Shown here: in pieces, positions 1 to 26,374 of the stretch | Layout of the letters: every line of letters starts with the position of its first letter | Position numbering within the stretch: the stretch's first letter is position 1 | NCBI GenBank assembly: GCA_002269645.1 | Contig: NIVC01000127.1 | Location: forward strand, 186,001-250,000 | Source: Macrostomum lignano | Taxonomy: Eukaryota | Direction: 5' to 3' | Length of the DNA: 64,000 nucleotides | Translations under genes and position numbers: made by a program | Notes under the pieces: generated by a model | Seen by the model: only the letters and a program-made list of their open reading frames with translations | The model's database searches: none | Told to the model about the DNA's origin: nothing

Positions 1-248
1 AATAAAACTGGGCTAAAACAGACTTTATGGATGAGGAAGGGCAATAAAACTGGGCTAAAACAGACTGTATGGGTGAGGAAGGGCAATTTGGCTAAAACAG
101 ACTGTTTGGGTGAGGAAGGGCAATAAAACTGGGCTAAACAGACTGCTTGGGTGGGGAAGGGCAATAAAACTGGGCTAAACAGACTGCTTGGGTGAGGAAG
201 GGCAATAAAACTGGGCTAAAACAGACTGTTTGGGTGAGGTAGGGCAAT
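1..248. repeat. Minisatellite, ~41-42 bp unit, ~6 copies (truncated by window edge)
   Basis: Repeated GGGCAATAAAACTGGGCTAAAACAGACTGTTTGGGTGAGGAA. Confidence 0.95.
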
Positions 249-1178: not shown

Positions 1179-1882
1179 CCCATGTGCAAGGTGTCTCGAT
1201 ACGCTCTGAACTTCTGCCACGTGCTGTCCTGTATGTGGATGCTGGTGCTGGTCACTGACCGAGTGCTGGTTGTTCACCGACCGCTGGCCATGAAGAATGT
1301 CGGGCTGCGCTGGGCGGCGAGGGCTCTGGCTGGAACACTCGTTCTGTCCGCTGTGATCGCCCTGCCGAACGGCATTCTGGTGGGTCACCAGACAGTCACC
1401 ATGCATGACGGCACCATCCTCATCTTCTGCTACCACCTGCACGAGACGCAGCTGTTCATGCTCGGCTACACGACATCGATGTCGAATCCACCTCTGGTGT
1501 TCATCCTGCTGATGCTGGGCCTCAACTGCTTCCTGCTATCGCGGGTGGTCGCCGCAGTCAGGAAGCGCCGCAGTCTTTCTATGCACTGCTTTGGCACCAG
1601 GATGGTGTCCGATGCCTTTTTCATTTTGCACTGCCAGCCCTGGCCATGAGACCAACAATGCAGCTTTCTCTCTACTCTCTGGACTACCTGACTGTTCTGG
1701 CTATCGTGGCCTTCTCCCTCACCCACACCTTGGCCCTCATCAACCAATGCGTCAACTTTTTCATACTACGCAACCGCAGCGCGCCGTTCAGATGCTGCCT
1801 GAAGCTGATCACTGCTCCAGCTGCACCAAGCGAACGGCTGAGCAGAGAGTGTGAGACGGTGAAATATTCAATTATCAGATAG
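1179..1882 (+). pseudogene. 5'-truncated, frameshifted 7TM GPCR pseudogene (TM3-TM5, part of TM6, TM7)
   Basis: 1180-~1548 is nearly identical to 4339-~4708 of the intact paralog (MCKVSRYALNF...LLSRVVAAVRKRR). After a frameshifting deletion at ~1585-1610, another frame gives LFHFALPALAMRPTMQLSLYSLDYLTVLAIVAFS...INQCVNFFILRNRSAPFRCC, matching paralog TM6/TM7. Confidence 0.9.
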
Positions 1883-3163: not shown

Positions 3164-3632
3164 AGATTAGCTTTGAGTCTGAGCAAGTGTTCAGTGAGAT
3201 TAGCTTTGAGTCTGAGCAAGTGTTCAGTGAGATTAGCTTTGAGTCTGAGCAAGTGTTCAGTGAGATTAGCTTTGAGTCTGAGCAAGTGCTCAGTGAGATT
3301 AGCTTTGAGCTTGAGCAAGTGCTCAGTGAGATTAGCTTTGAGTCTGAGCAAGTGCTCAGTGAGATTAGCTTTGAGTCTGAGCAAGTGCTCAGTGAGATTA
3401 GCTTTGAGTCTGAGCAAGTGCCCAGTTAGAGGTTAGCTTTGAGTCTGAGCAAGTGTTCAGTGAGATTAGCTTTGAGCTTGAGCAAGTGCTCAGTGAGATT
3501 AGCTTTGAGTCTGAGCAAGTGCTCAGTGAGATTAGCTTTGAGTTTGAGCAAGTGCTCAGTGAGATTAGCTTTGAGTTTGAGCAAGTGCTCAGTGAGATTA
3601 GCTTTGAGTTTGAGCAAGTGTTCAGTTAGATT
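3164..3632. repeat. Minisatellite, 33-bp unit, ~14 copies
   Basis: GAGATTAGCTTTGAGTCTGAGCAAGTGCTCAGT tandem array. Confidence 0.97.
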
Positions 3633-3728
3633 AATTGACGGCGAGCAAGTTCTTGGTCAGTTGAGTATGATTGTGATTGAGTTAAAGTTCACACTGAATT
3701 TCCAGAGAGGAATAATGGGAGCAAGGAG

Positions 3729-3968: not shown

Positions 3969-5111
3969 ATGAACAACCTGACCTTGAAAGCGGTGAAAAT
4001 CGGGTACGTGGAGAGTGCCATGCAGATTGTCAGGGACTGCCAGAGCGGAGACCCGTCCAGGTACCTCTTCTGCGTCATGTCTCACGTTATCGGCTCCGTG
4101 TCGGCCGTCCTGCTGCCAATCGTCGTTGTAGTCGGCACGCTGGGAAACATGGTCGTGGCCCACGTCATGCTGAACCGCCTGAAGCCCCTCACCCGCCAGA
4201 ATCTGTACCTGGGCTGCATCGCGATCGCCGATATTCTCAGCCTCGTCGTGATCGGAGTCTTCAACGGGTTTCTCACTAAGGGGCTACCCTGGCTCACCAG
4301 AGGACAATTCGGATTTTTCAGCTACAACCTGAGCGACGCCATGTGCAAGGTGTCTCGATACGCTCTGAACTTCTGCCACGTGCTGTCCTGTATGTGGATG
4401 CTGGTGCTGGTCACTGACCGAGTGTTGGTTGTTCATCGACCGCTAGCGATGAAGAATGTCGGGCTGCGCTGGGCGGCGAGGGCTCTGGCTGGAACACTCG
4501 TTCTGTCCGCTGTGATCGCCCTGCCGAACGGCATTCTGGTGGGTCACCAGACAGTCACCATGCATGACGGCACCATCCTCATCTTCTGCTACCAACTGCA
4601 CGAGACGCAGCTGTTCATGCTCGGCTACACGACATCGATGTCGAATCCGCCTCTGGTGTTCATCCTGCTGATGCTGGGCCTCAACTGCTTCCTGCTATCG
4701 CGGGTGGTTGCCGCTGTCCGGAAGCGTCGCATTCTGCAGAATCGCTCCGGCATCAACGCGCAGGACAGCAGCAGGAAGGAATTATCAGGCACGGTGATCG
4801 TGCTTATCTTGGCCATTCTCTATCTCCTACTGCACACTCCTCTGCTGGTGAGTCGGCCCGCCATTGAAGTGTCGCTTTTCCTCCTGGACATGGCGGACAA
4901 TTTGGACTTCCTCACTCTGCTGGCCAACCTCTTCTACTCCAGCTTGGTGATCAGTCTGATCAACCAGAGTCTCAACTTTTTTGTGCTTATGCGTCGCAGC
5001 CAACAGTTCAAGCAGTGCGTGTCGGCGGCTCTCTGCTGCGCCAGGAACAAAAGACCGAGGCGGTCAACATCTGGAATTGAGATGGGCACCGTCACTGCTA
5101 GTGCGCTGTGA
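3969..5111 (+). CDS. Intronless rhodopsin-class 7TM GPCR (peptide/chemoreceptor-like, FMRFamide-receptor/srw-like), paralog A
   Basis: Seven hydrophobic segments; GN in TM1 (GTLGNMVV), IAD in TM2, TM3 Cys (AMCKV) and DRV in place of DRY, ECL2 Cys, TM7 NFFVL. First ATG at 3969 (MNNLT, N-glycosylation sequon); the ORF-track start at 3942 is GTG. Confidence 0.93.
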   Translation: MNNLTLKAVKIGYVESAMQIVRDCQSGDPSRYLFCVMSHVIGSVSAVLLPIVVVVGTLGNMVVAHVMLNRLKPLTRQNLYLGCIAIADILSLVVIGVFNGFLTKGLPWLTRGQFGFFSYNLSDAMCKVSRYALNFCHVLSCMWMLVLVTDRVLVVHRPLAMKNVGLRWAARALAGTLVLSAVIALPNGILVGHQTVTMHDGTILIFCYQLHETQLFMLGYTTSMSNPPLVFILLMLGLNCFLLSRVVAAVRKRRILQNRSGINAQDSSRKELSGTVIVLILAILYLLLHTPLLVSRPAIEVSLFLLDMADNLDFLTLLANLFYSSLVISLINQSLNFFVLMRRSQQFKQCVSAALCCARNKRPRRSTSGIEMGTVTASAL

Positions 5112-5220
5112 GCACGTGACGCGTAGGTAGGGTAGCGGAGGAAGCATTGACCGATCCAGGGCCGCCTTAACTGTCGGGGAAGAAAGTCTGATGGCGGGTC
5201 ATTACTGGCCTGATTTCTAG

Positions 5221-5345
5221 TGTAACACTGGACGCTACTTTCTAATTCCCGGATGTTGTAACAATGGCCGCTAATTTCTAATTCCCGGATGTTGTCACAC
5301 TGGACGCTACTTTCTAATTCCCGGATGTTGGAACACTGGACGCTG
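5221..5345. repeat. Short tandem repeat, 36-bp unit, ~3.4 copies
   Basis: ACACTGGACGCTACTTTCTAATTCCCGGATGTTGTA repeated. Confidence 0.85.
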
Positions 5346-6019
5346 CCCCCTTAATTACCAGATATAACGCTGGTCGAAATTAGTAGCTAAAATGTTCCTA
5401 AAGGTTTGTGAAGCAAACTCCGGTTAAAAAGTAAAGCTGATTTTTTTTGGCAAAGCTGCTCCTAGCATAGAGATTGGACAACTGATTCAACAAATTGTTT
5501 TGCAAGAATAGAAATCGGCAGACATAAAAAAGGGCTCGCTTTTATTTTCAATAACCATTGTTTTGAATGAAACGAGACCAAATATTTTGTTCCTAAAAAC
5601 AGTTTTTATTGGAAAAAAAACTAAAATCGGTTTTGAACAAGACCCTTGTTTAGCCCCTCAGTGCCTGTCGCCTTTGTCTGCTGATCAGAGGCAGGTCTCT
5701 CCGCCTACCGCCCGCCACACGAAGGAGATGGTCCGCCATTTTTAGCAGCTCCATCTAAACGCTCACGCAATTGCCATCATGGATTTGAGTGGTTTTCAGT
5801 TTCGCAGGTTTTTTATCAAATATTTGCATTCCACCCAACCCCCACCTGTGTGTACTTTAAAGCAGATCTCTGACACGAACACGGACAACTCAAGCGCTGC
5901 ACTCGCGAGTTGTGCAAATTTCGCTGAGCTCCATTTTTCCTTAAATAGTAATAATATTAATACGAGCTAACAATAATAATTGATTACACCTGCCCTAATC
6001 GGCAGATCTGCAAGCGACC

Positions 6020-6261
6020 GCTCAGCCGCAGCTATTGCGCGGCGCATCTGAAGGCTGCGTACGGCTGTTCAGTCCAGGGACTGGGGGGTCGCCACATACA
6101 CACTCAATTACCCCAGCTTATGCTGGCACCCATTTTACAGCTGGGTGAACTGAAGCAATGCAGAGTTAAGTGTCTTGCTCAACAAATTGTTCCGAGTGGA
6201 TCGAGAATCGAACCTCCGACCTTTCAGTCGACAGTGGGGAGTCTCTAACCACTAGAGCCAT
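6020..6261 (-). mobile_element. tRNA-derived SINE with CORE/Meta-like central domain (copy 1)
   Basis: Minus strand: A-box-like TAGTGGTTAGAG, B-box GGTTCGATTC, then GAGCAAGACACTTAACTCTGCATTGCTTCAGTTCACCCAGCTGTAAAATGGGTGCC. Homologous copy at 54108-54840. Confidence 0.85.
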
Positions 6262-6296
6262 AATCATGGACAACTCTAGTTGTCCATGGCCATAAT
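6257..6296. other. 24-bp palindrome flanked by an 8-bp direct repeat (micro-transposon or footprint)
   Basis: GCCATAAT-CATGGACAACT-CT-AGTTGTCCATG-GCCATAAT. Confidence 0.7.
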
Positions 6297-6515
6297 AACC
6301 CTGTGTGATATGAGATAAATCTCAGTTCTGTCTCTCTAGGGAATTTTAATTCAAACGGATTTGTCTATGGCTAAACCCCATTCAGTGCTGTGCAAAAGAA
6401 GAAAATGTTTGTGAAATCCGTTTAGAAAACACAAATTCGGTATTTTAAGCTTAGCTTTGTCGTTCTTCAATGATACTTTTTCAACTTTTCAACTACAGAC
6501 TAAAACTGTAACGTG

Positions 6516-6725
6516 AAAACTTGAGACTGTAACATGCAGATTTCAGCCTGTAAACTTGAGACTGTAACCTGTAGATTTTAGCCTGTAAGCTTGAGACTGT
6601 AATCTGTAGATTTTAGCCTGTAAGCTTGAGACTGTAATTTGTAGATTTTAGCCTGTAAACTTGAGACTGTAATCTGTATATTTTAGCCTATAAACTTTAG
6701 AGTGTAGCTTGTAAACTTTAGAGTG
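6516..6725. repeat. Minisatellite, ~35-bp unit, 5-6 degenerate copies
   Basis: CTTGAGACTGTAATCTGTAGATTTTAGCCTGTAAG repeated. Confidence 0.85.
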
Positions 6726-8273
6726 TTTACTTAATACAGCCTCAGACTGTATCTTGTATCAGACCAACTGAAGCATGTAAATGGTCGAGCTTGTGTACTG
6801 TGAGCTACATTTCACACATTGAAGAATTTCTAATTCGGACAATATCCCACTTACAAACTAGTCAGCGCTTTTAGTCTGCACATTTTCTAAGCACATGATT
6901 ACCGGCTGAGACTTATTGACTTTGCCAGCAAAGAGTTGCCAGTTTACTTAGGGAACTTGCCATGAAAGGGAGATGGCCTCTAATGTTACAAAAAGTGATT
7001 CTGTTTGCTAAAAATACACAGCCTCTGCCACTTGCTGAACACATTGCTAGGTGATTTACAAATTGCCTTTCCTGCAACTTTCTAATGCAATAATGGCTGC
7101 ATCAAATATAATTTTACAATTGGTTCGGCTCTGCTCTGCTCTTAGCAAACATTTAATGAATGTAGGAGTGCGTGCACACTGCAGCCAAACAGGTCCTGAA
7201 TCGTTGTTCATCATCTGAGCGACGGAGATGATGATGGTGATTACCTAGCAGATGGAGGATGAGAGAAGCACGAACTTCTTCATGTCGACTAAAGGTCAGT
7301 GGCTGCTGAGACCGATTCCAGCGTTTTGTGCTTTTATATCCTAAATTTTAGCTCTTGAGCAATGGAGCATTCCATCTGGTTTATTAGGAAAGTGGTTTGA
7401 GTATTTTGATGTAATCTACTTTTCACTCTGAAGAAATGTGCCCATGGTCCATCAACTGCATGAGACGTGGCATGCACTGATATTGCAATATTTCAAACAG
7501 TATATATTCCTCTCAAAGAGATGTTCTCAACTACTTTAACGTAGAATAAAATTGTGCTCAAATTAAACCGAAACTGCGAGTGCGCCCGCTCCACTGCCTG
7601 TGTGTTTATTGCGGGTGCATTTAAAAAACCATGCCTTACATGGGCTACGAAATGTATGCAGATTAATAGTCTAAACTGGCAGAGTGATTTGATTGTCGTT
7701 AATTTAAAAAAACTACAGGTTTTTTTAAGATCGACAGATTAGCGGATACCAGCGAGCAGATGGAGCTACCAAATCACAGACTAAACAGGTGCGGTTCAGG
7801 TTGGGATAATTTTTTAAAATATTGTTAGTTAGCTTTGAAAAATCTCAAATTTTTAGAAAAAATCCTTATTAAGATTATTTGAATTCGTGCATCCATAAAG
7901 GTAATCAAGCGACTCAAGTGTGACAATAGAAAGCAGTAGTACGATCTCACAGTGCGATAAAATAGTTGAAAATATACGCGAATGGTGACATAACAACACA
8001 AAACTACGGCCTAATAGAGTGTAGCCTGACTGTCAATAGTCAAAACTAAAAGTACATAAAACGGAGGCGATAAAGTCTATCGGCGTGCAAAGAGTGCAAA
8101 CGTAAAATATCATTAATATGTTCGTGCAAACTCATGTCCAATAAAAATTCACTCATTTTTAGTCTTTCAAATATCTCATCAATGTCGTACACTCGTCCTT
8201 TCACAGAACACAACATCCTCAGTAGCGGGAAGTCCGCCAGTCTTCTCCGCCCTCCTGTCGCAACCTCAGATCC

Positions 8274-9419
8274 TCAGTTTGCCGTTCTACTGGCCGTCGG
8301 CTGGTCTGTGTCGGACCTGGACTGCAAGTCTTTGCCAGCAGAGCAGCAGAACATGGCGAGAACGCATCTCTTGAAGGACTGGCTGCGGCGCATCAGCACG
8401 AAGAAGGTGAGGCTCTGGCTGACTACGCTGAACACGAGGGTCATGAAGAACAGGTCGGCCAGCAGTATAATGTAGTCCAGGTGAGTGGCCGTGTCCAGCA
8501 CGAACTGGGAAATCTCCAGCAGCATCCGGCAGGCCAGCAGCGGGGCGTGCAGCGCCAGGTAGATTACGGCCAGGATCACCACAATGATGGTGCCGGAGAT
8601 CTCCTTCGGATATTTCTGCTTCTGCGACTCTCCGCCGCCGGCGCCGAAAGACGACATGCTGCGGCGTTTGCGCACCGCGGCAGCCACGCGGGTGAGCAGG
8701 AAGCAGTCCAGAGCCAGGATCAACAGGATGATCAGCAGCGGCGGGTTGGACATCGCCGAGGTGTACACCATCATGAACAGCTGGTAATCTGGCAGGTGCG
8801 AGCACAGGATCACAGTCACCCCGTCTGGCCGGTACAGCAGGTGGTGCCCGGTAAGAAAACCGTTCGGCAGGGCGATCGCAGCGGACAGAACGAGTGTTCC
8901 AGCCAGAGCCCTCGCCGCCCAGCGCAGCCCGACCTTCTTCATGGCCAGCGGTCGGTGAACAACCAGCACTCGGTCAGTGACCAGCACCAGCAGCCACATA
9001 CAGGACAGCACGTGGCAGAAGTTCAGAGCGTATCGAGACACCTTGCACATGGCGTCGCTCAGGTTGTAGCTGAAAAATCCGAATTGGCCTCTAGTGAGCC
9101 AGGGCAGGCCCTTGACAAGGAACCCGTTGAAGACTCCGATCACGACGAGGCTGAGAATATCGGCGATCGCGTTGCAGCCCAGGTACAGATTCTGGCGAGT
9201 GAGCGGTCGCTGGCGCTTCAGCATGACGTGGGCGATGACGATGTTGCCCAGAACTCCAATGAAAAATATGATGGGGAGCAGTACGCCCGATACGGAGCCC
9301 GTGATGTTTGACTGGATGCACTGCATGTACCTTGATGGGTCACCACTTAGGCAGTCTTGGACCATCCGGAATGCATTGGCTGAGTAGACAATTCGCGCCT
9401 CTTTGCCAGTGCCGTTCAT
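8274..9419 (-). CDS. Intronless rhodopsin-class 7TM GPCR, paralog B
   Basis: Same motifs as paralog A (DCxSGDPSR, GN, IAD, AMCKV, TDRVL, FFVL). First ATG at 9419 (MNGTG); the ORF-track start at 9440 is TTG. Confidence 0.93.
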   Translation of the reverse strand: MNGTGKEARIVYSANAFRMVQDCLSGDPSRYMQCIQSNITGSVSGVLLPIIFFIGVLGNIVIAHVMLKRQRPLTRQNLYLGCNAIADILSLVVIGVFNGFLVKGLPWLTRGQFGFFSYNLSDAMCKVSRYALNFCHVLSCMWLLVLVTDRVLVVHRPLAMKKVGLRWAARALAGTLVLSAAIALPNGFLTGHHLLYRPDGVTVILCSHLPDYQLFMMVYTSAMSNPPLLIILLILALDCFLLTRVAAAVRKRRSMSSFGAGGGESQKQKYPKEISGTIIVVILAVIYLALHAPLLACRMLLEISQFVLDTATHLDYIILLADLFFMTLVFSVVSQSLTFFVLMRRSQSFKRCVLAMFCCSAGKDLQSRSDTDQPTASRTAN

Positions 9420-9507
9420 GATGGCTGTTTCTGGGACCAAACAGGTGGGGCAAGTGACGTTTTCTGATGATTTTCATATGGTCTTTCTTGGAGCTTCTAG
9501 TATCAAA

Positions 9508-9944
9508 TTGTAGCTTCCACTGCCTCATCTTGTAGCTTACACTGCCTCATCTTGTAGCTTCCACTGCCTCATCTTGTAGCTTCCACTGCCTCATCTTGTA
9601 GTTTCCACTGCCTCATCTTGTAGCTTACACTGCCTCATCTTGTAGCTTCCACTGCCTCATCTTGTAGCTTACACTGCCTCATCTTGTAGCTTACACTGCC
9701 TCATCTTGTAGCTTCCACTGCCTCATCTTGTAGCTTCCACTGCCTCATCTTGTAGCTTCCACTGCCTCATCTTGTAGTTTCCACTGCCTCATCTTGTAGC
9801 TTACACTGCCTCATCTTGTAGCTTCCACTGCCTCATCTTGTAGCTTACACTGCCTCATCTTGTAGCTTACACTGCCTCATCTTGTAGCTTCCACTGCCTC
9901 ATCTTGTAGCTTACACTGCCTCATCTTGTAGCTTACACTGCCTC
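9508..9944. repeat. Minisatellite, 22-bp unit, ~20 copies, directly upstream of GPCR paralog B
   Basis: TAGCTT(C/A)CACTGCCTCATCTTG tandem array. Confidence 0.97.
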
Positions 9945-10884
9945 CATCGAACCTGGACAGCAAACCTTTGTCTCTGTCATCAGAACTTGGATTTCTCAGG
10001 AGTTCATTAACTACATGTAAGACAATTCAATGAGTGCAAAAATAGCGAGAATGGGACTCACTTTGTCGCGCGCTGCTCAGGGTCCTGCGATACTTTTTAG
10101 CGCTCGGGAAATATTCGAGCGGTCCATTAGCAATAGATGCTCGGAATTTAAATAGGCCTGCATCTTGACTGGGGATTTGTCACCTGAGAGCAGCTCGCTT
10201 GTCACACCTCATCTCTCTCCAATCAGTTTGAATCAAAGAGGAGAAGTCTACATGTGAGCGCTAATCGCTTCAAAATAAAAGCTTTTATCATCACTCCTAA
10301 GCCTGTAAAAATAAATATCCTTCTTAACGTCAGCGCAAGCTTGAGTGGTTGCTTTTTGATTGACAGTGGATGTCTTAACTAACCGGGCTGGTGTTATTGT
10401 TCGATTCGGTTTTTCTGTTAGCAACAATGCAGTTGTTGGGCATCAATGCTTGAAAAATTATCGAGTTAAAGCGACGCTCGGATACCGATACTCTAAAAAG
10501 TATGGACGATAGGTGATCGATGGTAGGATTTGAACATTTGAGTATCGATCGATACTTTAGTCCGATATTAACATGGTTGGCTACGGGGCGGGCAGCTGGC
10601 TCAGTTTCTCTCTCCCCCGCGCGGTGTGATTGGCTGTTATGGGGTAGAGCCCGTCGGAAGGGGTTGTGGTGGGCTGGAGCTGCCTTGCAGCCCTATCTCT
10701 CTCTCCCCTCCGCGTGTGCCGGGCCGGCTGTTTAGGCAGTCGCGCCGCACTCTGGGTCTGTGTTTACAGACTTTCTAGCTCATGCTTCGTCTAATTCTGG
10801 TTGCCAACTTGCCCTCGGCCTTGACGACTTTTTCGTCAAGCGCGACCGCTGTTTTTCGTTACTTGTACGAAAAAAAGCCGACAT

Positions 10885-11020
10885 AGGTTGCTTAAATTGC
10901 TACAACCTCAGCTACAACCATTGCTGGTTGCCAGAGAGCCTCCTGCTCTTACCCCCACATCTACAAAGTGAAGGGCTGTGGGCGGCAGCATCCTGCCCAT
11001 CAGCACCAACATCCTGCTCA
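10885..11020 (+). pseudogene. Gag-like Cys/His zinc-finger remnant of the Ngaro-like element
   Basis: CYNLSYNHC..., then after a frameshift CSYPHIYKVKGCGRQHPAHQH, resembling Ngaro ORF1 zinc fingers. Confidence 0.45.
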
Positions 11021-11137
11021 ACTGCTCCAGCGCGGTCCTGATGACTCGCAGCCAATTCAGGAGACAAAAAACTGAGTGAATTTTATAGTGCTTTTAATCC
11101 TCCGCGTCAACCAAATTTTAACTCCTCTGCTGGTGAT

Positions 11138-12060
11138 TTGAAGGCTTCCGCTTGGGAGAAACTGTTGCATAACGACCCCGACAAGCAGTATTTGATGAAT
11201 GGCATTGTTCACGGCTTTCGTCTGGTTAATAATAAGCAGCCTAATATTACTACTCTGAGAGATAATTACGCATCCGCTAGCCAGAATGCCGCCAAGGTGG
11301 AAGCTCAGCTTCTGGATGAGCTTCGGCTAGGCCGCTACACCGTTACTCAGGAGCCTGTAAAAGTGAACCCAATTGGTGCCTTGCCTAAAGCCAACGGGAA
11401 AGTCCGCCTCATTCACGATCTGTCTGCTCCGCTCGGCGACTCTGTTAATGACTACTATCAGCAGGAGAAAGGTATCCTTTTTGGCTCCGTTCGAGAATTC
11501 AAAAAGCATTTAAAGCCCGGTTCCTTCATGGCCAAAGTGGATCTGAAAGATGCCTACAGGTCCGTCGCCATCAGTCCTGATGACCATTGTCTTACTGGTT
11601 TGAAGTGGCGCTTTCTAAGCCAGGACTGCGAGACTACGATGTTCGACACCAGGCTGCCTTTTGGTTCGCGCGCCTCCTGTGAGATTTTTCACCGGCTCTC
11701 ATCAGCGGTGAGACGCCACATGGTGCGGTGCGATTTTCATGCCACCGTCAACTACCTGGACGATTGGGCGATCGCAGCTGACACGGAGAGCGGGGCCCGG
11801 CGGGCCTATTGATTTTCTGACTAGTCTGCTGCAGTCGCTGGGGTTCACTATTAACTGGGATAAGTCGACTCAACCTGTGCAACAGTTGGTTTTCTGGGAA
11901 TAAGCATCGATACGCGCAAGGGCACGATGAGTCTTCCTGCTGACAAAGCCAGTGAGATCGACAGCCTGCTGAGGGACTGCGGCCGCATGCAGACCATTCG
12001 CCTCAAGACTATGCAGAAGCTGGTGGGAAAGCTCGGCTGGCTGTGTCAAATCAATGGCGG
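11138..12060 (+). pseudogene. Reverse transcriptase (DIRS/Ngaro type), frameshifted near 11810
   Basis: KVRLIHDLS, MAKVDLKDAYRSV, RLPFGSRASCEIF, VNYLDD; continues in another frame as LTSLLQSLGFTINWDKS...KLVGKLGW. Confidence 0.9.
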
Positions 12061-12650
12061 CCTTTCCTTGGGCCGCTGATTGCCTCCATGGACTATGACT
12101 GCAAGGCTACAATTTTAGTTACGTCCGAGCTGAAAATGCATCTGGATTGGTGGCTGGAAGCGCTGGACTGGTTGCCGCCTAGTAGTCTATGGCCAAACTA
12201 CCAGCAGCTCGCAGCGATCGAGTCTGGCAGCTGCACCAAAGGTGCGGCAGGCATTCTGAGGACCTCAACTGTCACTGACTGGGTCTACATCAACTGGGAG
12301 AGAGACTTTAATGACCAGTTCATGAATTTACACATCAACTTCAAGGAAGCCATGGCTCTGCTGTTGTCTGTTTTAAAGTTTCGCTCGACTCTGGTCAACA
12401 CCAGGGTTGTGGTGTACTCTGATAGTACCGCCGCTGTCGGCATGATAAAGCGCCTGTCCTGCAGTCATCCCGATCTCCTTCGGATCTATCAAACTGTGGC
12501 TTTGTTGTCCATTCGTGATGGTATTTGTATTGAAGCTTATCACCTGCCGGGTCGTATGCAAATTTCTAGTGACGCTGCGTCTCGTATGCTCGGTTCACGT
12601 GCTGAATTGCTCAACTTTTGCTTTCGTTTTTATGGTCACATCTGCCTTTT
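12043..12650 (+). pseudogene. DIRS-type RNase H domain
   Basis: HINFKEAMALL, VVVYSDSTAAV, EAYHLPGRMQISSDAASR match the DIRS RNase H pattern (HIN.xE, SDS/N, H.PG..N..AD..SR). Confidence 0.85.
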
Positions 12651-12699
12651 GCCTGACAATTTTGCCATGCACGCGCTCTCGGTGTCTTCTCGCGCCGCC

Positions 12700-13483
12700 C
12701 TCCGCTTTCAGGTCGCCTCCGCTCTCGGGACGGGCCGCCCCAGAAGGCAGTCTTCGTCAGTCTGCTCTGCCGCCTCGCCCTCGCAGACAGTTCCTGGAAA
12801 TCCTACTGCAGCCAATTCAAGGCCTGGCGTGCGTTCTGTGATCAGGCGGGCATCGGTCCGACCACCGCCAGCGAGAGCGACCTGTGCCAGTACGTCGTCC
12901 ACCTGGTGCAATCCCGAATTAGCGCCTTCTCAGCCCTGCGGTCCTACATCAATGCCGTCTCGGTGCTCCATCAGCTGGCCGGCTCGCCAGACCCAGCTCG
13001 AGGGCCGGCACGGCTGCAGTTCCTTTTGAGGGGTGCTCGGCGCTTCCTGGGGCTTCAGATCAAGCAGGTGACGGCGCTTGAGCCTGCTCACCTGCGGCGG
13101 CTTGCGGGCGACCCTGCGGCCCGTCGAGGCTTCGCCCCGAACCTGTGGTCTGCAGTGGCCTGGTGGGGGCTGATCAGAGTCGGCGACCTGCTGCCGGACT
13201 CTGGAGCTGCCGAGCTGCGCTCTAGCCATCTGTCCTGTTCCGGCTCCGGGCTGGTACTGCAGCTGCAGCGGTCCAAGACCAACCAGTTCGTCCAGCGTGT
13301 CCACACGGTGCAGCTGTGGGGCCAGTGGTTGTGGCCAGCTTTGCCCTGCAGGCGGGAGTGGCCTTGCCTGACATCATGGCCCTGGGTGACTGGCGTTCTG
13401 ACTGTGTGAAGCGCTACTTTAGTGGCCGTGCTTCTGTGGCCCGCAAGTCTCGGGCGGTCGATCAGATGGCGTCGCATTTTTAA
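12700..13483 (+). pseudogene. Tyrosine recombinase, internally deleted
   Basis: LRSYINAVSVLH, LIRVGDLL (catalytic Arg), RSKTNQ, and in another frame ASFALQAG...GDWRSDCVKRY (His/Trp and catalytic Tyr region). The H-x-x-R box is missing near 13320. Confidence 0.85.
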
Positions 13484-14928
13484 TTTCCCCCCGTCTCTTC
13501 TCTGACTAACTGTCGTTTTATCCTCTTTGGGGTTGGGAGTTCGTTTGCTGCTCCCCCCGTTATTGCTTCGTTGCATTCACGCCTCGCGCTCGCCAAGCGC
13601 TGCCCTCCTTGCCTGTCCATCCTCATGGTTTAAAGCTATTTTCAAGACTGTGATAGAACTTTTCATAAATTAGATAAAAACCTACTCGATTAAACTAAGA
13701 AAGATGCATGCACTGCAGAGACTACTGACGAAATTGAGTTCAGTAGTTCATTTTTGCGCTGTCGCGAGGTGCAAAGGCTTCTATGGCCACATAAGTGGCT
13801 AATGAGTGGCCCATCTTGTGTATACATGATCTTTGACTTCATCTACCGCCCGTGTTGTGGGGCAAAATGAATAGCCCAAATAAAGAAAGACTGATAAAAT
13901 AGAGAACGAAGGGCCAAGGAAGTGAGTGCGCTTCTCTGTCTCTTCTTTTTTGGTTGCGAATGGACAGCTATAGGGGTCCGTGTGTCCAAACGCCTAGCTA
14001 AAATGTGATAAATATCTCGCACACTGCAGGGAAAAGGCATTGCGGACAAATCTCATGGACCCTCTACCGTTACTCCATTGGCCAGGTTTTCAGAGATGAA
14101 ACATAATTTTGAGATTTATTCTGAGAAATTGGCCACTAGAGTGAACAAAGGACACTGCACTCGCTTCAAAAATCGCAAAATTTGCACCTTTCGAATTTCG
14201 GACTTTCGATTTCCAAATAAAGGGAACATGTGTCTCATTTGAGTTCGAGGTGCTAAAACAACCGAAAACTTACTATCTCTCTATTTTGCAGCGAAAACTA
14301 TGTAGCAGTCTCCAGTGAAATTTGCAGGATTTGAAAGCGCAAGCGTCCTTATAATGTAGTTCTCCAAGCCTCATATTCGTGTGCTTGTGTCTGTACAGTG
14401 GGTATCGCTGACTGCGAACTGACTGTCGTCCTGATTTGCCCTATTATTTTTTATTAGAGGCAGGGGGGTTGTGTGCACCCTGGCGCACTTTAAGCGACAT
14501 GGGCACACAACCGGCGAGAGGCATTACTGCCCATTCCGCCGACTCCCCTGAGCAGGCACACAAGCGCGCGGATACGTACGCAGGTACACACTCATACAGG
14601 AGTGTACAGCGACCCTAACTTTATATTATTGTTAGGCATGCACACTTCACTGCGCCTTGGGGGGTTGGCTCTCAAGGCCGTTAATTGCACGAGCAGAGCC
14701 AAGCCGAGATTCCAATTCAGCCCCAAATTAATGTGAACCTGCACTTGGAATCGAGCCTGGGTCGCTGGCACACCAGAGCCTGCGCTAGACCGCTGGGCTA
14801 CGGCCCCCCTCTGATTTGCCCTAAGTGCCCAAAAGCATCTCAGCAAACCATGCTACTACAAGTAGTGCAGTGTAACCAAATTTCATCACTCTCTGAACTT
14901 ACCTCTACGCTTGAGATGTTTTGAGATG

Positions 14929-15617
14929 TCAGGTTCATGAGGGAATTGCTGAAATGCTGTGGCTCATGGGGGTTTGCTGAGATGTCAAGGTTCATGAGGG
15001 AATTGCTGAAATGCTGTGGATCATGGGGGTTTGCTGAGATGTCAAGGTTCATGAGGGAATTGCTGAAATGCTGTGGCTCATGGGGGTTTGCTGAGATGTC
15101 AAGGTTCATGAGGGAATTGCTGAAATGCTGTGGCTCATGGGGGTTTGCTGAGATGTCAAGGTTTATGAGGGAATTGCTGAATTGCTGTGGCTCATGGGGG
15201 TTTGCTGAGATGTCAAGGTTCATGAGGGAATTGCTGAAATGCTGTGGCTCATGGGGGTTTGCTGAGATGTCAAGGTTCATGAGGGAATTGCTGAAATGCT
15301 GTGGCTCATGGGGGTTTGCTGAGATGTCAAGGTTCATGAGGGAATTGCTGAAATGCTGTGGCTCATGGGGGTTTGCTGAGATGTCAAGGTTCATGAGGGA
15401 ATTGCTGAAATGCTGTGGCTCATGGGGGTTTGCTAAGATGTCAAGGTTCATGAGGAGATTGCTGAAATGCTGTGGCTCATGGGGGTTTGCTAAGATGTCA
15501 AGGTTCATTAGGAGATTGCTGAAATGCTGTGGCTCATGGGGGTTTGCTGAGATGTCAAGGTTCATGAGGGATTGCTGAAATGCTGTGGCTCATGGGGGTT
15601 TGCTAAGATGTCAAGAT
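14929..15617. repeat. Minisatellite, 57-bp unit (dimer of 29+28-bp related subunits), ~12 copies
   Basis: GCTGAGATGTCAAGGTTCATGAGGGAATT+GCTGAAATGCTGTGGCTCATGGGGGTTT. Confidence 0.97.
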
Positions 15618-16549
15618 TAATTGGGAGTTGTTGGTAGGCCATCATCAAAGAGACAGTTAGGGTTAAGCCATGGCTTAAAGGGAGGCTTTGATCCCAAAGC
15701 TCACGTGGTGCTGATATTTTCGGCTAGATTGCTGGTTTTCGGGGCTGATACTGTTTTTGCTTCAAGCATCATTTTCCCTAAGATACTAACAATTACAAAA
15801 CCTACATTTAGTTTATAAAAAATGCTTTTATTCCTTTCTTTCTTGCTTCCCCACGGGGGCGTAGATTGCTAGTTCCATCTAAAATTTCGATAATGCATCA
15901 AAACAGCAAAGGAAGTGAAGCATCTCTCAGCGGTAAAAGGTGTGAAAATGGTTAAATTCCTGGATTCGGCTAAAGACGCCAAATCAACGTTTTTCTTTTT
16001 CTATCGATTCCGCACGTCAATAGAAGAATGAAGCTTTTGTTTCAAAAACAAACGGGCTTTTCTGAACAATTGACGTGTTGGTGATGCGCCATGCGTTTTA
16101 CAATAGGGCAACAGCTCAATTTGAATGGGGCAACTCAATAGGTTTTCCTTCTCGAAAAGGCTGCACGAATGATCAGGCGCACTGGATATTTAAGAAATAA
16201 AATTTTCAGAATCCTTAAAACCCTTCAGTGCTTTTGTTTTCATCTGGGAAAAGTGAACAGTTTGCATACTTTCCATGCATGTTCTTTTCCGGTCGCGATT
16301 GCGTAACACAAGCGTAACATTATTCTTTTTAATTTCGGCAGCCGTAAGATTATCATAAGACGGCCGGCTTCAGGATATTTCAGAATCTGAACCACCGGTG
16401 ATTTGCATCAAAATGGAACAGTAACTCTTTGGTCTGATGGGACTATAGACAATCTGTGACAAAAAGTATGAAGTAAAATCTAGGTTGCATCATAGATAGG
16501 AACTTCAAAGGATAAAACCAGTGATAAGACCAGTTCTAAGCCATCCTAA

Positions 16550-16760
16550 GTCTTAAAGACAAAAAATTGTCTACACGAGCTTGCAGAAGAAGCTTTACTA
16601 ACTCGTATGTTTCAAAGCAGACTTAATCTTCTTACTAAGTGCTGTTTCCAGATGCGTAGATAAATACAAAATATATTAATATGGGCTGCATAAGGCAGTA
16701 ATACACCAATATGGAAGGCTTGCGGAGGCTGAAACCAGCTGAAACGTCGAGACACATAGA
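16550..16760 (+). mobile_element. Possible decayed Penelope-like element 3' end
   Basis: LAEEALLTRMFQSRLN resembles the GIY-YIG C-terminus (E..xI....LN), followed by a degenerate hammerhead-like GCGGAGGCTGAAACCAGCTGAAACGTC. Confidence 0.35.
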
Positions 16761-17006
16761 GCCACTCCCTGCTCTCCGGCTGCTGAAGTCAGTGCCTCAA
16801 CTGGTAACCCATTATATTCTTTCATTCATGCAAAAAACAGCTTTCTGTCACTTCTGCTTTGTCTACAACTCATTAACATGCAGCATCCAAAGGAACCCGA
16901 AAATTGCTGAGCATCAGGGCGGCTGCCTTTCAACCTTTTGACTCCCCAGACCTAAAAATCTGACAGCATTTCCACCCAGATGGAGTGGGATAAAGCCTGC
17001 CTCCTC

Positions 17007-17205
17007 CTTCATCCGGGTGCCTCATCAGGGTACCTCCTCCTTCATCCGGGTGCCTCAGCCTTCATCCGGGTGCCTCCTTCTTCATCCGGGTGCCTCAGCC
17101 TTCATCCGGGTGCCTCCTTCTTCATTCGGGTGCCTCTGCCTTCATCCGGGTGCCTCAGCCTTCATTCGGGTGCCTCAGCCTTCATTCGGGTGCCTCAGCC
17201 TTCAT
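17007..17205. repeat. Minisatellite, 20-bp unit, ~10 copies
   Basis: TTCATCCGGGTGCCTCAGCC repeated. Confidence 0.92.
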
Positions 17206-17525
17206 GCCGCAGCAGATGACTAGGATAGGGCCATTTGGAGGCTGAAAAAAGAAATACAAAAAATGCCAAGAGCATATAAAAGAAATTTCTAGGCTTTAAG
17301 TAATTGCTTTTGTATTTTTTTAACCTGCCACTGAGAAAGCGTACTGCTGTTGCAGGTTTTTCGAGTTTCGAGTTATTTCAATCTTTTTGATTTCTGCGGA
17401 TTGTTGAATGAAATGACAACAAAAGCAGGTATCAGTAGCCATTAGGTAAAGTTGCCCTTGACAGTCAGAAACCGATCATGAAGTCCATTTTATTTTAAGT
17501 CGAGCCTGCACCTCAGTTTTGTAAC

Positions 17526-18605
17526 TTAAGGTTGATAGTCAGCACTGCGACGCAACAGCACGGCTCTTCGAAACTGACGATTTCGGCGTAGCAGCACAAA
17601 GAAGGCGGTGCACTGGTTGATGAGGCCAGTCACCGAGCTGCAAAACAGCATGTTCACCACAAGGGCTATGTAGTCCATGTTTTCAGCCACGTTCACTAGG
17701 CGGGCCGCCAGCTCAGCCCAGAGGCGGAACACAAGCATCGGAACGTTGAGAACCAGGTAAATAACGCTCATAATCATGACCACTAGAACTCCAGAGATCT
17801 CCGAGGTAGTCAGCTGTTGCTGCTGCTGTTGAGCCGCCGACAAAGACCGACGATTTCGGATTGATTGGATAACCCGCCGGAGCAGGAAACAGTTGAGAGC
17901 CAGGATAGTCAGGATGAGCAGCAGTGGCGGGTTGGTGAGCAAAATGGTGTACGGCATCATGAACAGCTGCGAGTTGGCGAGTCGGTAGCAGTAGATGGCT
18001 GCCACCCCATTGCCCAGCGGCACTTGCAAGTAGCCCATCAGGAAAACGTTCGGCAGGGCGATCGCAGCGGACAGAACGAGTGTTCCAGCCAGAGCCCTCG
18101 CCGCCCAGCGCAGCCCGACATTCTTCATCGCTAGCGGTCGGTGTACAACCAGCACTCGGTCAGTGACCAGCACCAGCAGCCACATGCAGGACAGCACGTG
18201 GCAGAAGTTCAGAGCGTATCGAGACACCTTGCACATGGCATCGCTCAGGTTGTAGCTGAAAAATCCGAATTGGCCTCTGGTAAGCCAGGGTAGCCCCTTA
18301 GTGAGAAACCCGTTGAAGACTCCGATCACGACGAGGCTGAGAATGTCAGCGATAGCGTTGAAGCTCAGGTACAGATTCTGGCGAGTGAGGGGCCTCAGAC
18401 GGTTCAACATGACGTGGACCACGATGATGTTGCCCACGAGTCCAGTGACGAAGATCGCTGGCAGTAGGATGCCAGACAGGATGCCCATCACGTTTGACAC
18501 GGCGCAGTACAGTTTCCGGGACGGATCGCCGCTCATACAATCCCTTACCATCAACATGGCGTTGTCACCGAATACAACTCGCCTCACTTTTTGAGTGGCA
18601 TTCAT
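17526..18605 (-). CDS. Intronless rhodopsin-class 7TM GPCR, paralog C
   Basis: 359-aa ORF starting MNATQ; same family motifs (DCMSGDPSR, GN, IAD, AMCKV, TDRVL, FFVL). Confidence 0.93.
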   Translation of the reverse strand: MNATQKVRRVVFGDNAMLMVRDCMSGDPSRKLYCAVSNVMGILSGILLPAIFVTGLVGNIIVVHVMLNRLRPLTRQNLYLSFNAIADILSLVVIGVFNGFLTKGLPWLTRGQFGFFSYNLSDAMCKVSRYALNFCHVLSCMWLLVLVTDRVLVVHRPLAMKNVGLRWAARALAGTLVLSAAIALPNVFLMGYLQVPLGNGVAAIYCYRLANSQLFMMPYTILLTNPPLLLILTILALNCFLLRRVIQSIRNRRSLSAAQQQQQQLTTSEISGVLVVMIMSVIYLVLNVPMLVFRLWAELAARLVNVAENMDYIALVVNMLFCSSVTGLINQCTAFFVLLRRNRQFRRAVLLRRSADYQP

Positions 18606-19952
18606 CGCTGATATCTCTTTTGGGTTGCGTTTGGTGTTTAATGCTTGTGATACCTGCTATGTAATTTAAAACAGTATTGAACAGAATTCCGCAAACAGCT
18701 TACTGGAGTAAATTTTACGCAAAATTACTGGTCGATTTTAATTGGTCTGAAATTCTGATTGGTTCTTGCTTTGAATTGTCATTTGCCTGCAACTTACTCT
18801 CTTATACATGTAAATGACACTTTCATCAGCTAAAAGATGACTTTCCGAAAGGGAGTTTTATATTTCTTGTGTATTATCCACATCTAAAACTTCCTGTTCA
18901 GTGCTAACAGGAATTTTCCCGAATTTTTTATATCGTCAGGTCAGACAAACATCACAGAAAGACATGCCTTGCATTGCATTTCCATGGAAACATTTTGGGT
19001 TTTGACGTGAAATTATTTCCATGAAATTATTAGCTAACCTCTGGTTCCATGGTTTTCTTTTTTATCCATTAATCTGGAAGTTTTCGGGCGAAGATAGGCG
19101 TACGAACTTTTTAGAAGATAGGAGGATGTGAGGCCGTTGTCACCAGGGCGTTCTTATAAAGTAATGCTGAGATTTTTTACCATTTTCTAAACAGCTACGT
19201 ATACAAATTTATAAACGATAAACAAAAACTAATTGTTAGAATAAACAGTCGTAAATAAAATTACCTTTTTGAATAAAATTATTTAATTCAACAAAAAATC
19301 TAAATCTTTTGTTTAAATCAGACAAAAATAAAATTTGTTTCGAATCCCCGAATCCCCGGACTCTTTTTAATTAGTACTACTACATTCCCAAATACATTAT
19401 ATCCAAATTCCAAAGTAGCCTAGGTCCTACCAAAACTTCCATAGTCTGAATTTTTCCAAATTGTGTCTTCGCTGTATATCAGGAGGAACCGTTAATTAAA
19501 AAATATAACATCTCTAGGCTAAGGATTGGCTGTGTTAATGTATGTTGGCAAATTTCTGTTTGCAGAAAAAGTAGGTCTAGGGCTAGGCCTAGCTAGGGGG
19601 CCTATATTTATAATTTATCTTATGCTCAAATTAGCGCTTCTACATCTAGAAAGATCAGAAGTTTCTAAATATTAAAGCTTATTTTAGATTAAGCCTGTAC
19701 TTATACAGTGGCATGTTAATTGTTATTTTTTATTGTTTAGCCTACTTTATTGGGCAAGTAAAAAATAGTAAGAATATAGACAGTTAAGTAAAAGTTCTTG
19801 TTAAAGCAAATTAACTTTTAACTAATAATAGAAATTTTAAAAGTAACTTTGTAATTTATAAAATAACTGGTAACTTTTAGCCTAGGCCTATCCTAAAATA
19901 GCAGCCTTTAGGTCTATAAAGAGTTATAACGACTTAGGCATAGACCTAGGCA

Positions 19953-20543
19953 TGGCTGAACGTTAACGAATGTAATTAAAGGCTAATTAATTATGCCAGT
20001 TATTATTGCTTTTGGTTTGAGTTAAATAGCAGGCAAGCACGGGATAAAGATAATATATATTATTACTAATGCATGAGATGGGTTTGTTTGCTGCAGTGCC
20101 GGTGCGCTAGGTCAAACTTACTAAACGAAACTATTAATTAATAAAACAACTATTAAAAAGGAAGTGGTCGTAGTGGTAGAGGAAGGGTGGTAGGTGGGTT
20201 GGTAGGGAAAACTTTAAAGAAAACAGGGCACAAAAGCGGCATAAATAATCAAAAAGGGACGCTGACAAGCACTGGAAACAGACGTTGGGCAACAAAATTC
20301 ATGGGATGGAATAGGCTCAAATACATTGGGACACCAGGCGGATAAACAAAATTTAACATAGGGAACAACGAAAAACAGTGAAGGGACGCGACCAGGCCAC
20401 GGAAAGGAAAGGGAGCTGGGCAAACGATGGACAAAAATTGAGGTGAAAAGATAGCGGATGGGACAGTATATTATAGTTTTGAATGTGCTTCATATTATTA
20501 AAATTAGGTTCAGTCAATTACTTGTGGCATCTCGCCTACCACA
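19953..20543. repeat. LTR-like direct repeat copy 1 (~590 bp, TG...CA)
   Basis: Colinear and roughly 90-95% identical by eye to 26708-27304; both begin TGGCTGAACG and end CCACA. Confidence 0.85.
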
Positions 20544-20583
20544 TACGCGGGGCAGCCCTACGCAATGGGAAGAAACTTGGCAG

Positions 20584-26307: not shown

Positions 26308-26353
26308 AGTATAACGTTTGAACGACTCGTTGAAGGGGTTTTGGCGTTTCGTA

Positions 26354-26373: not shown

Positions 26374-26374
26374 G

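What the first reader, a model, noticed from the sequence alone, without database searches (positions are those of the whole stretch)
4190..18385. Mosaic GPCR cluster: TM2-TM4 block homogenised across otherwise divergent paralogs
Seen: a ~340-bp block (A ~4190-4530, B ~8862-9200, C ~18048-18385, pseudogene from 1180) is nearly identical at the nucleotide level, including third codon positions, across three intact genes (e.g. IGVFNGFLxKGLPWLTRGQFGFFSYNLSDAMCKVSRYALNFCHVLSCMW). The N-termini, ECL2, TM5-TM7 and C-tails are only about half identical in protein. The boundaries are sharp (the 3' edge falls just after IALPN). Inference: recurrent inter-paralog gene conversion, working across opposite orientations over 4-14 kb, keeps one receptor module uniform while the ECL2/TM5-7 ligand-contact surfaces diversify. 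This could be a modular receptor-diversification system.
Basis: partly seen in the sequence, partly recalled or inferred. Interest (0 to 1): 0.72.

Follow-up and report, generated by a model that had tools for sequence, protein, structure and literature searches.

The report
Gene conversion block in flatworm receptor genes
Three neighbouring orphan receptor genes of the flatworm Macrostomum lignano keep one 370-base stretch almost the same by copying short pieces from one another while the rest of each gene has drifted far apart; this is real, but it is a well-known kind of process.

Summary
Three intact intronless class-A GPCR genes (A 3969-5111 +, B 8274-9419 -, C 17526-18605 -) share a 345-375-nt block that is 92.5-94.6% identical. 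It runs from the end of TM1 through ICL1, TM2, ECL1, TM3 and ICL2 to TM4. The rest of the CDS is about 57-62% identical and the non-coding flanks do not align. dS is 0.13-0.24 in the block and 1.05-1.40 outside it.

The window is Macrostomum lignano Mlig_3_7 contig NIVC01000127.1. Two homeologous contigs carry further copies of gene C. Among the three C copies, 8 of 11 variable block sites carry the base of paralog A or B (P about 2e-10), against 1 of 10 outside the block. Four-gamete conflicts (Rm >= 3) occur only in the block. Synonymous divergence between the C copies is no lower in the block than outside.

Ongoing short-tract inter-paralog gene conversion is therefore well supported. Synonymous constraint, recent duplication and assembly collapse are rejected. 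Short-read mis-polishing of single sites is unlikely but was not excluded, because no reads were examined.

A dedicated "modular diversification system" is not shown. The pattern is what conversion plus selection or a homology threshold produces, as in red/green opsins and CCR2/CCR5. The genes are unannotated and resemble the flatworm-specific PROF1/Srfb family. I class this as a new member of a known kind, of moderate interest.

The parts
3969..5111 (+). Gene A: intact intronless class-A GPCR of 380 aa, counted from the first ATG. The ORF opens at GTG 3942.
   Evidence: ORF list. Pfam 7tm_1 at 49.8 bits, cut-off 30.5. AlphaFold model with pLDDT 91.8 and seven TM helices. Best PDB fold matches are peptide-type class-A receptors.
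4158..4529 (+). Homogenised block in A, alignment codons 73-196 (the strict A-B and B-C block starts at 4188). It encodes the end of TM1, ICL1, TM2, ECL1, TM3, ICL2 and TM4.
   Evidence: Codon alignment and change-point fit. dS is 0.13-0.24 here against 1.05-1.40 in the flanks. Helix limits come from the model.
8274..9419 (-). Gene B: intact intronless paralog of 381 aa, counted from the first ATG. The ORF opens at TTG 9440.
   Evidence: Pfam 7tm_1; 64% amino-acid identity to A.
8862..9233 (-). Homogenised block in B.
   Evidence: It differs from A at 24 of 372 nt and from C at 28 of 372 nt.
17526..18605 (-). Gene C: intact intronless paralog of 359 aa. Its homeologs are C' (L003 2253-3332, minus strand) and C'' (L004 1552-2631, minus strand).
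18048..18419 (-). Homogenised block in C. Among C, C' and C'' this is where the A-type and B-type patches occur (codons 132-191).
1180..1804 (+). Chimeric pseudogene P. 1180-1370 is the 3' half of the block. 1180 to about 1547 is an A-like tract running through ECL2 and TM5. 1634-1804 is a divergent, frame-shifted remnant of TM6-7. The 5' end is cut by a minisatellite-bearing insertion.
   Evidence: tblastn and blastn. Difference map: 4 B-type sites in the block, 2 differences in ECL2-TM5, then decay at codons 256-264. Inverted repeat arms.

Best explanation
A, B, C and the remnant P are old tandem duplicates of an intronless, flatworm-specific (PROF1/Srfb-like) orphan class-A GPCR in Macrostomum lignano. 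A block of about 370 bp (ICL1 to TM4) is kept 93-95% identical by continuing non-allelic gene conversion with short tracts, from about 13-40 nt up to the size of the block. This happens between copies in either orientation, 3-14 kb apart. Outside the block the copies have diverged past the identity that homologous repair needs, so conversion no longer occurs there.

Shown:
- the regional drop in dS;
- the paralog-matching patches that arose after the three subgenomes split;
- the confinement of these patches to the block.

Inferred: what fixes the edges. Most likely the block stays conversion-competent because conversion itself keeps it similar, which is a self-reinforcing homology threshold. 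The abrupt 3' edge at the TM4/ECL2 junction is then held by selection against importing a paralog's ECL2. The functional consequence, also inferred, is that the receptors share one TM2-TM3-TM4/ICL2 core but differ in the N-terminus, ECL2, TM5-7 and tail. The ligands are unknown.
For: - dS (Nei-Gojobori) is 0.13-0.24 in the block and 1.05-1.40 in the flanks; dN is 0.02-0.035 against 0.36-0.55.
- There is no similarity in 1.5 kb of non-coding flank for any pair, so the duplications are old.
- The window is 100% identical to NIVC01000127.1 of Mlig_3_7. Two further contigs carry the same locus, with C' and C''. This matches the three subgenomes S, L1 and L2 (PMC10733133).
- Among C, C' and C'', 11 of 372 block sites vary against 10 of 708 flank sites. 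In the block, 8 of the 11 minority states equal the base of A or B (null 3.2% per mutation, binomial P = 1.8e-10). In the flanks the figure is 1 of 10 (null 22%).
- With five sequences, 8 of 18 informative block sites break the C clade, all in codons 132-191, and Rm is at least 3. In the flanks, 130 of 131 informative sites support the C clade.
- pS between C and C' is 0.031 in the block and 0.028 in the flanks.
- TM4 is weakly conserved across the family (0.17-0.19), yet differs among A, B and C at a single residue (V/A, codon 191). TM1 is as conserved as the block family-wide but is not homogenised.
- P also mixes A-type and B-type states.
Against: - Only three paralogs plus two extra copies of one of them could be read. 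The A and B copies on the other two contigs could not be fetched, so donors and directions are inferred from the window's A and B.
- The assembly was polished with Pilon using short reads and RNA-seq (PMC5730564), which could misplace single variants among near-identical copies.
- GC3 is not raised in the block, so there is no sign of GC-biased conversion.
- Block divergence among paralogs (5-7.5%) exceeds divergence among homeologs (about 2%), so homogenisation is slow and partial.
- The cause of the sharp edge is not demonstrated.
Confidence: 0.85

Rival explanations
1. Selection-maintained modular design. Conversion is favoured because it keeps a signalling core uniform, and divergent or positive selection on ECL2 and TM5-7 sets the block edge. 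The cluster would then act as a receptor-diversification module.
For: - The 3' edge is identical for all pairs and falls at the TM4/ECL2 junction. Divergence is saturated immediately beyond it, with no gradient.
- In the pseudogene, where selection is absent, an A-like tract crosses this edge through ECL2 and TM5.
- Family-wide conservation does not predict the block limits.
Against: - Flank dN/dS is 0.30-0.47 and never above 1.
- Divergence also covers TM1, ICL3, helix 8 and the tail.
- The block includes ECL1 and TM3, which form part of the ligand pocket in class-A receptors.
- There are only three genes and one pseudogene tract, and there are no expression or ligand data.
Confidence: 0.2
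2. One or two historical conversion or domain-swap events produced the block, and nothing has happened since. The block is simply younger than the flanks.
For: Block dS of 0.13-0.24 is well above the homeolog pS of about 0.03, so most of the similarity predates the subgenome split.
Against: Paralog-type patches differ among C, C' and C'', so exchanges occurred after the split. Private differences within the block are clustered: C-private at codons 91-97, B-private at codons 110-119. Starting a conversion between sequences only about 60% identical is hard to explain.
Confidence: 0.07
3. Assembly or polishing artefact. The block identity, or its fine mosaic, comes from collapsed or mis-polished repeats.
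For: Mlig_3_7 is a Canu PacBio assembly polished with Pilon from Illumina and RNA-seq reads. The genome holds three near-identical subgenomes, and 36% of the assembly length lies in chimeric scaffolds.
Against: - The copies are not identical (20-28 differences), and each has private variants.
- Three independently assembled contigs give the same block in intact ORFs.
- Pilon cannot turn sequence that is 40% diverged into sequence that is 94% identical.
- Reads from A or B carry several mismatches to C in codons 150-172, so they should map to their own gene.
Confidence: 0.04
4. Nucleotide-level purifying selection on the block, from an embedded RNA element, an antisense ORF or extreme codon constraint, with no exchange between copies.
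For: Antisense ORFs cover the block in B (8481-9311) and in P (897-1442).
Against: - Synonymous divergence among the C homeologs is as high in the block as outside, or higher.
- No antisense ORF of at least 100 aa exists in A or C.
- RNA folding of the block gives z = -0.26, and there is no Rfam match.
- Distant family members are only 31-42% identical in this region.
Confidence: 0.02
5. Recent whole-gene duplication followed by fast divergence of the flanks.
For: None beyond the low divergence within the block.
Against: Flank dS is saturated at 1.05-1.40. Positive selection cannot raise synonymous divergence. The non-coding flanks show no similarity.
Confidence: 0.01

Closest known systems
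Human/Old-World-monkey red and green opsin genes (OPN1LW/OPN1MW): tandem class-A GPCR genes under ongoing gene conversion, with a divergence peak at exon 5
   Same: Both are tandem GPCR paralogs. Conversion keeps most of the sequence alike while a functionally distinct part stays diverged, giving regions of very low and very high divergence within one gene (review PMC3924837).
   Different: In the opsins the diverged part is a small island in an otherwise homogenised gene. Here the homogenised part is a 370-nt island in otherwise saturated genes. The genes here are intronless, three or four copies take part, and they lie in both orientations.
CCR2/CCR5 chemokine-receptor partial gene conversion in mammals
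   Same: Both involve adjacent intronless-CDS class-A receptors with repeated, independent conversion of only part of the coding region. The N-terminus is never converted (PMC8877049).
   Different: CCR2/CCR5 tracts vary between lineages and always include extracellular domains. Here the converted region is one fixed block with the same 3' edge in every pair, and it excludes ECL2.
PROF1 / Srfb flatworm-specific rhodopsin-like orphan GPCRs (Zamanian et al. 2011; Saberi et al. 2016)
   Same: The genes are intronless, and most are missed by gene models. They show remnants of rhodopsin motifs (IA..D in TM2, DRV at TM3/ICL2). The closest relatives are flatworm 'rhodopsin orphan GPCRs', and the fold is peptide-receptor-like.
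   Different: No phylogeny with reference PROF1 sequences was made. The TM6 and TM7 motifs fit only loosely. Block-wise concerted evolution is not mentioned in the PROF1 papers I read; a full-text search for 'gene conversion' with 'Macrostomum' returned 9 papers, none with both terms in title or abstract and none opened.

Membership tests
Class A (rhodopsin-family) GPCR | Match to Pfam 7tm_1 above the gathering score | tested here: met
   A scores 49.8 bits, B 46.3 and C 49.0, against a cut-off of 30.5.
Class A (rhodopsin-family) GPCR | Seven-helix bundle with helix 8 and fold similarity to solved class-A receptors | tested here: met
   The AlphaFold model has pLDDT 91.8 and pTM 0.89, with TM1-7, an ECL2 hairpin and H8. 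The top Foldseek PDB hits are ETB, apelin, opioid, SSTR and CCK1 receptors, with E about 1e-10 and TM-score 0.6-0.8.
Class A (rhodopsin-family) GPCR | Canonical motifs: N1.50, D2.50, the C3.25-ECL2 Cys pair, DRY, W4.50, P5.50, CWxP and NPxxY | tested here: inconclusive
   Read from the sequence. GN in TM1, IAIAD, the Cys pair, W in TM4, and P in TM5 and TM6 are present. DRY is replaced by DRV, CWxP by LH(T/A)P, and NPxxY by (N/T/A)FFVL.
PROF1 / Srfb flatworm-specific orphan rhodopsins | Intronless gene | tested here: met
   Each gene is a single uninterrupted ORF of 359-389 aa. PROF1 is described as exclusively intronless (PMC3261222).
PROF1 / Srfb flatworm-specific orphan rhodopsins | Closest relatives restricted to Platyhelminthes | tested here: met
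   In a profile search of 1.84e9 cluster representatives, the named top hits are Macrostomum, Spirometra/Sparganum, Echinococcus ('rhodopsin orphan GPCR'), Protopolystoma and Schistosoma ('rhodopsin-like orphan GPCR'). Many hits are unnamed Logan or ENA contigs.
PROF1 / Srfb flatworm-specific orphan rhodopsins | PROF1 motif table: TM2 [L/I][A/S]..[D/E]; TM3 D[R/K][C/M] or DR[L/V]; TM6 [F/Y]...[S/A/T].P; TM7 [N/D/S][F/G/I]..[Y/F/M/L] | tested here: inconclusive
   TM2 (IAIAD) and TM3 (DRV) fit. TM6 (Y...H/N.P) and TM7 (NFFVL in A, but TFFVL in B and AFFVL in C) fit only in part. The motifs mix the PROF1 subgroups I, II and III.
PROF1 / Srfb flatworm-specific orphan rhodopsins | Placement inside the PROF1 clade in a tree with reference S. 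mansoni and S. mediterranea members | not tested
   The reference PROF1 sequences were not retrieved.
Interlocus (non-allelic) gene conversion / regional concerted evolution | Synonymous divergence between paralogs lowered regionally relative to the rest of the gene | tested here: met
   dS is 0.13-0.24 in the block and 1.05-1.40 outside; Fisher tests on third positions give P <= 2e-11.
Interlocus (non-allelic) gene conversion / regional concerted evolution | Phylogenetic incongruence or four-gamete conflicts confined to the converted region when orthologous or homeologous copies are added | tested here: met
   In the block, 8 of 18 informative sites break the C/C'/C'' clade and Rm is at least 3. 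In the flanks, 1 of 131 does.
Interlocus (non-allelic) gene conversion / regional concerted evolution | New variants in one copy match the paralog's base and are clustered | tested here: met
   8 of 11 match, P = 1.8e-10. The patches are codons 153-164 (A-type in C'') and codons 168-172 (B-type in C').
Interlocus (non-allelic) gene conversion / regional concerted evolution | Paralogs within a species more alike in the block than orthologs between species | not testable with these tools
   No other Macrostomum genome could be reached. No close protein was found in the two similarity searches. None of the three genes is on record as a called gene.

The most novel reading that the evidence does not exclude
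The cluster exchanges cassettes in both senses. Besides homogenising the TM2-TM4 core, conversion tracts that start in the shared core occasionally run out into ECL2-TM5. Decayed copies such as P then serve as a reservoir of alternative ligand-binding cassettes for the intact genes, which would be pseudogene-templated receptor diversification. The A-P tract (window 1180-1547 and 4339-4706) would be one such event, with P as the donor.
Probability: 0.06. Interest if true: 0.7.

Novelty: new member of a known kind. Interest (0 to 1): 0.33.

Why it matters
- It is a clean, internally controlled example of regional concerted evolution. The three subgenomes of a neopolyploid act as a natural replicate, showing conversion still at work and confined to one block.
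- Trees of flatworm orphan GPCRs are usually built from the TM1-TM4 block (PMC3261222). Such trees can be badly misled in clusters like this one.
- It adds five unannotated, apparently functional receptor genes to the M. lignano repertoire.
- It does not reveal a new mechanism.

Tried and rejected
- Two word-index protein searches, one with gene A and one with the block peptide, found nothing.
- Exact-protein look-ups of A, B and C found no called gene. I therefore could not fetch A', B', A'' or B'', nor any other genomic family member.
- The locus of the M. lignano relative P0004 holds a single gene and no cluster.
- A Sawyer-type longest-run test on polymorphic sites was uninformative, because all three genes are homogenised together.
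- Three differences falling within 13 nt is not significant by clustering alone (P about 0.2). The signal comes from the match to the paralog bases.
- GC3 shows no biased-conversion signal.
- The first structure job, with a three-sequence alignment, gave pLDDT 37.7 and I discarded it.
- RNA folding and an Rfam scan of the block were negative.
- Family-wide constraint as the sole cause of the block limits is rejected. TM4 is poorly conserved yet homogenised, whereas TM1 is conserved yet not homogenised.


Full report
**What is there.** The first 19 kb of the window hold three intact, intronless ORFs: A (3942/3969-5111, +), B (8274-9419/9440, -) and C (17526-18605, -). They also hold a gene fragment, P (1180-1804, +). 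All three proteins match Pfam 7tm_1 above threshold. A model of A built on a 44-sequence family alignment is confident (pLDDT 91.8, pTM 0.89). It shows seven helices, an ECL2 beta-hairpin and helix 8. Its best PDB matches are peptide-type class-A receptors: endothelin B, apelin, opioid, somatostatin and CCK1.

**Origin of the window.** The Rab28 gene at 32377-33093 is encoded exactly on two contigs of the Macrostomum lignano assembly GCA_002269645.1. Locus L002 (NIVC01000127.1) is 100% identical to window 22377-43093, so the window is that contig from position 186001. A profile search of 1.84e9 cluster representatives finds nothing closer than a 270-bit M. lignano hit. The named relatives are flatworm 'rhodopsin orphan GPCRs' from Macrostomum, Spirometra, Echinococcus, Protopolystoma and Schistosoma. 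The genes are intronless, have IA..D in TM2 and DRV at TM3, and are missed by gene models. These features fit the PROF1/Srfb family as described in PMC3261222 and PMC6114109. The TM6 and TM7 motifs fit only loosely, and I made no reference tree. A, B and C are not annotated.

**Checking the observation.** In a codon alignment, nucleotide identity rises from 0.5-0.7 to 0.85-1.0 between alignment codons 73-83 and 196. Third-position identity rises from 0.35-0.6 to 0.85-1.0 over the same range.
- A two-rate change-point fit places the 3' edge at alignment nt 589-590 for all three pairs. This is just after IALPN (A 4529, B 8862, C 18048).
- The 5' edge is at codon 83 for A-B and B-C and at codon 71 for A-C.
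- The copies differ at 20-28 of 372 nt.
- Nei-Gojobori dS is 0.13-0.24 in the block and 1.05-1.40 in the flanks; dN is 0.02-0.035 against 0.36-0.55.
- Fisher tests on third positions give P between 2e-11 and 3e-18.
- 1.5 kb of non-coding sequence on either side of the genes shows no similarity for any pair.

Mapped on the model, the block covers the cytoplasmic end of TM1, ICL1, TM2, ECL1, TM3, ICL2 and TM4, ending two residues before TM4 ends. The ECL2 hairpin starts four residues later. Protein identity is 94% in the block and 11-71% in the other segments. The block is 93-95% identical rather than nearly 100%, and its 5' edge is graded and lies slightly further upstream.

**The decisive evidence.** M. 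lignano DV1 carries three subgenomes, S, L1 and L2, which differ by about 1.9-2.4% in SNPs. All three are represented in Mlig_3_7 (PMC10733133). The same locus is present on two further contigs: L003 (NIVC01000162.1) and L004 (NIVC01001722.1, reached through a Rab28 cluster representative). Each carries an intact copy of gene C, named C' and C''. Non-coding substitution divergence upstream of the three C copies is 1.2-3.1%.
- Among C, C' and C'', 11 of 372 block sites vary, against 10 of 708 flank sites.
- pS between C and C' is 0.031 in the block and 0.028 in the flanks. The block therefore has no special synonymous constraint.
- Of the 11 variable block sites, 8 carry as the minority state exactly the base found in paralog A or B. 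The null expectation is 3.2% per mutation, giving binomial P = 1.8e-10. In the flanks the figure is 1 of 10 against a null of 22%.
- The states come in patches. C'' is A-type at codons 153, 162 and 164. C' is B-type at codons 168, 169 and 172. C is A-type at codons 168-169, where C' and C'' are B-type. Codon 191 also swaps.
- With five sequences, 8 of 18 informative block sites contradict the C/C'/C'' clade. All of them lie in codons 132-191, and at least three exchanges are required. In the flanks, 130 of 131 informative sites support the clade.
- The block half of pseudogene P is also a mix of A-type and B-type states.

This is the signature of ongoing, short-tract, non-allelic gene conversion confined to the block.

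**Rivals.**
- *Nucleotide-level constraint.* The homeolog comparison rejects it. In addition, there is no conserved antisense ORF, RNA folding is unremarkable (z = -0.26), there is no Rfam match, and distant relatives are only 31-42% identical in this region.
- *Recent duplication with fast flank divergence.* Saturated flank dS and unalignable non-coding DNA reject it.
- *Collapse or polishing artefact.* This is unlikely. The copies differ and have private variants, and three independently assembled contigs agree. However, the assembly was Pilon-polished with short reads and RNA-seq (PMC5730564). Single-site states should therefore be confirmed on long reads.
- *A single historical event.* This is contradicted by the patches that arose after the subgenome split. 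Even so, most of the similarity is older than that split: block dS among paralogs is 0.13-0.24, against about 0.03 among homeologs.

**What sets the edges.** This part is inferred. Family-wide conservation does not predict the block. TM4 is poorly conserved (0.17-0.19 pairwise identity among 41 distant homologs), yet differs among A, B and C at a single residue (V/A at codon 191). TM1 is as conserved as the block but is not homogenised. The 3' edge is abrupt, shared by all pairs, and followed at once by saturated divergence. That points to an old, stable barrier. In pseudogene P, an A-like tract runs across this edge through ECL2 and TM5. It has only two differences over codons 197-255, then decays in the conserved RKRR patch. 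Beyond that, P keeps its own TM6-7, which is only about 40% identical to A. The edge is therefore not a mechanical limit. Selection against importing a paralog's ECL2 into an intact gene, together with the self-reinforcing need for sequence identity, is the most economical account. This matches the known behaviour of duplicated genes under conversion plus selection, with the red/green opsins as the textbook case (PMC3924837). It also resembles the partial CCR2/CCR5 conversions (PMC8877049).

The claim of a modular diversification system is not shown.
- Flank dN/dS is 0.30-0.47.
- The diverged parts include intracellular segments.
- The block includes pocket-lining TM3 and ECL1.
- GC3 gives no sign of biased conversion.

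**Verdict.** The gene-conversion reading is well supported and is now backed by direct evidence of recent exchange. The 'system' reading is over-interpretation. This is a new instance of regional concerted evolution in a GPCR cluster, found in unannotated flatworm-specific receptors. Its practical lesson is that TM1-TM4-based trees of these families can mislead.

Noticed in passing
window 1180-1804, with 994-1087 and 2046-2753: Pseudogene P is chimeric. It is A-like from TM3 to TM5 and has its own frame-shifted TM6-7. Its 5' end is cut at 1180 by an element carrying a 21-bp minisatellite. That minisatellite also occurs in inverted orientation 1 kb downstream, with 32 copies at 2073-2753.
   Followed up: partly
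L003 2253-3332 (C') compared with window 17526-18605 and L004 1552-2631: The private changes in C' are 8 nonsynonymous to 2 synonymous, including P->H in the family-wide RPLTRQN motif. The private flank changes in C are 4 synonymous to 0 nonsynonymous. One homeolog may be under relaxed constraint.
   Followed up: partly
window 19943-28892: This stretch has no counterpart in the homeologous contigs (L003; in L004 the gap is 19868-27591). It holds a gypsy-type integrase ORF (23702-25477, minus strand; Pfam rve and Integrase_H2C2). It looks like a subgenome-specific retrotransposon insertion.
   Followed up: partly
window 11138-13409: Between genes B and C there is a reverse-transcriptase fragment (Pfam RVT_1) followed by further long ORFs with no Pfam match. 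This is probably a decayed retroelement.
   Followed up: no
window 29521-30696, 32377-33093, 36767-37498 (-), 52278-52907 (-): The neighbouring genes are an intronless Pex13, an intronless Rab28, and exons of a phosphorylase-kinase beta subunit gene (KPBB_C and Glyco_hydro_15 domains). All three are conserved on all three homeologous contigs.
   Followed up: partly
window 1-248, 3164-3633, 9508-9944, 14922-15615, 17000-17205, 40092-41674, 42648-43536, 44516-45480, 50766-52242, 59625-61737: Minisatellites are very dense, with periods of 20-57 bp and up to about 50 copies. Several create long spurious ORFs in all frames. One lies directly upstream of gene A and another directly upstream of gene B.
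   Followed up: no
genes A, B, C (window) and C', C'' (L003, L004): None of these intact receptor ORFs is annotated in GCA_002269645.1. No protein in the clustered collection of 15 billion sequences falls within 50% identity of them. This echoes the report that most PROF1 genes are missed by gene models.
   Followed up: yes
P0001 (UniRef A0A1I8HJ75, M. lignano): This 2481-aa gene model fuses two nearly identical copies of another PROF1-like receptor with retroelement and cadherin-like segments. It is probably a mis-merged model over another tandem receptor cluster.
   Followed up: no
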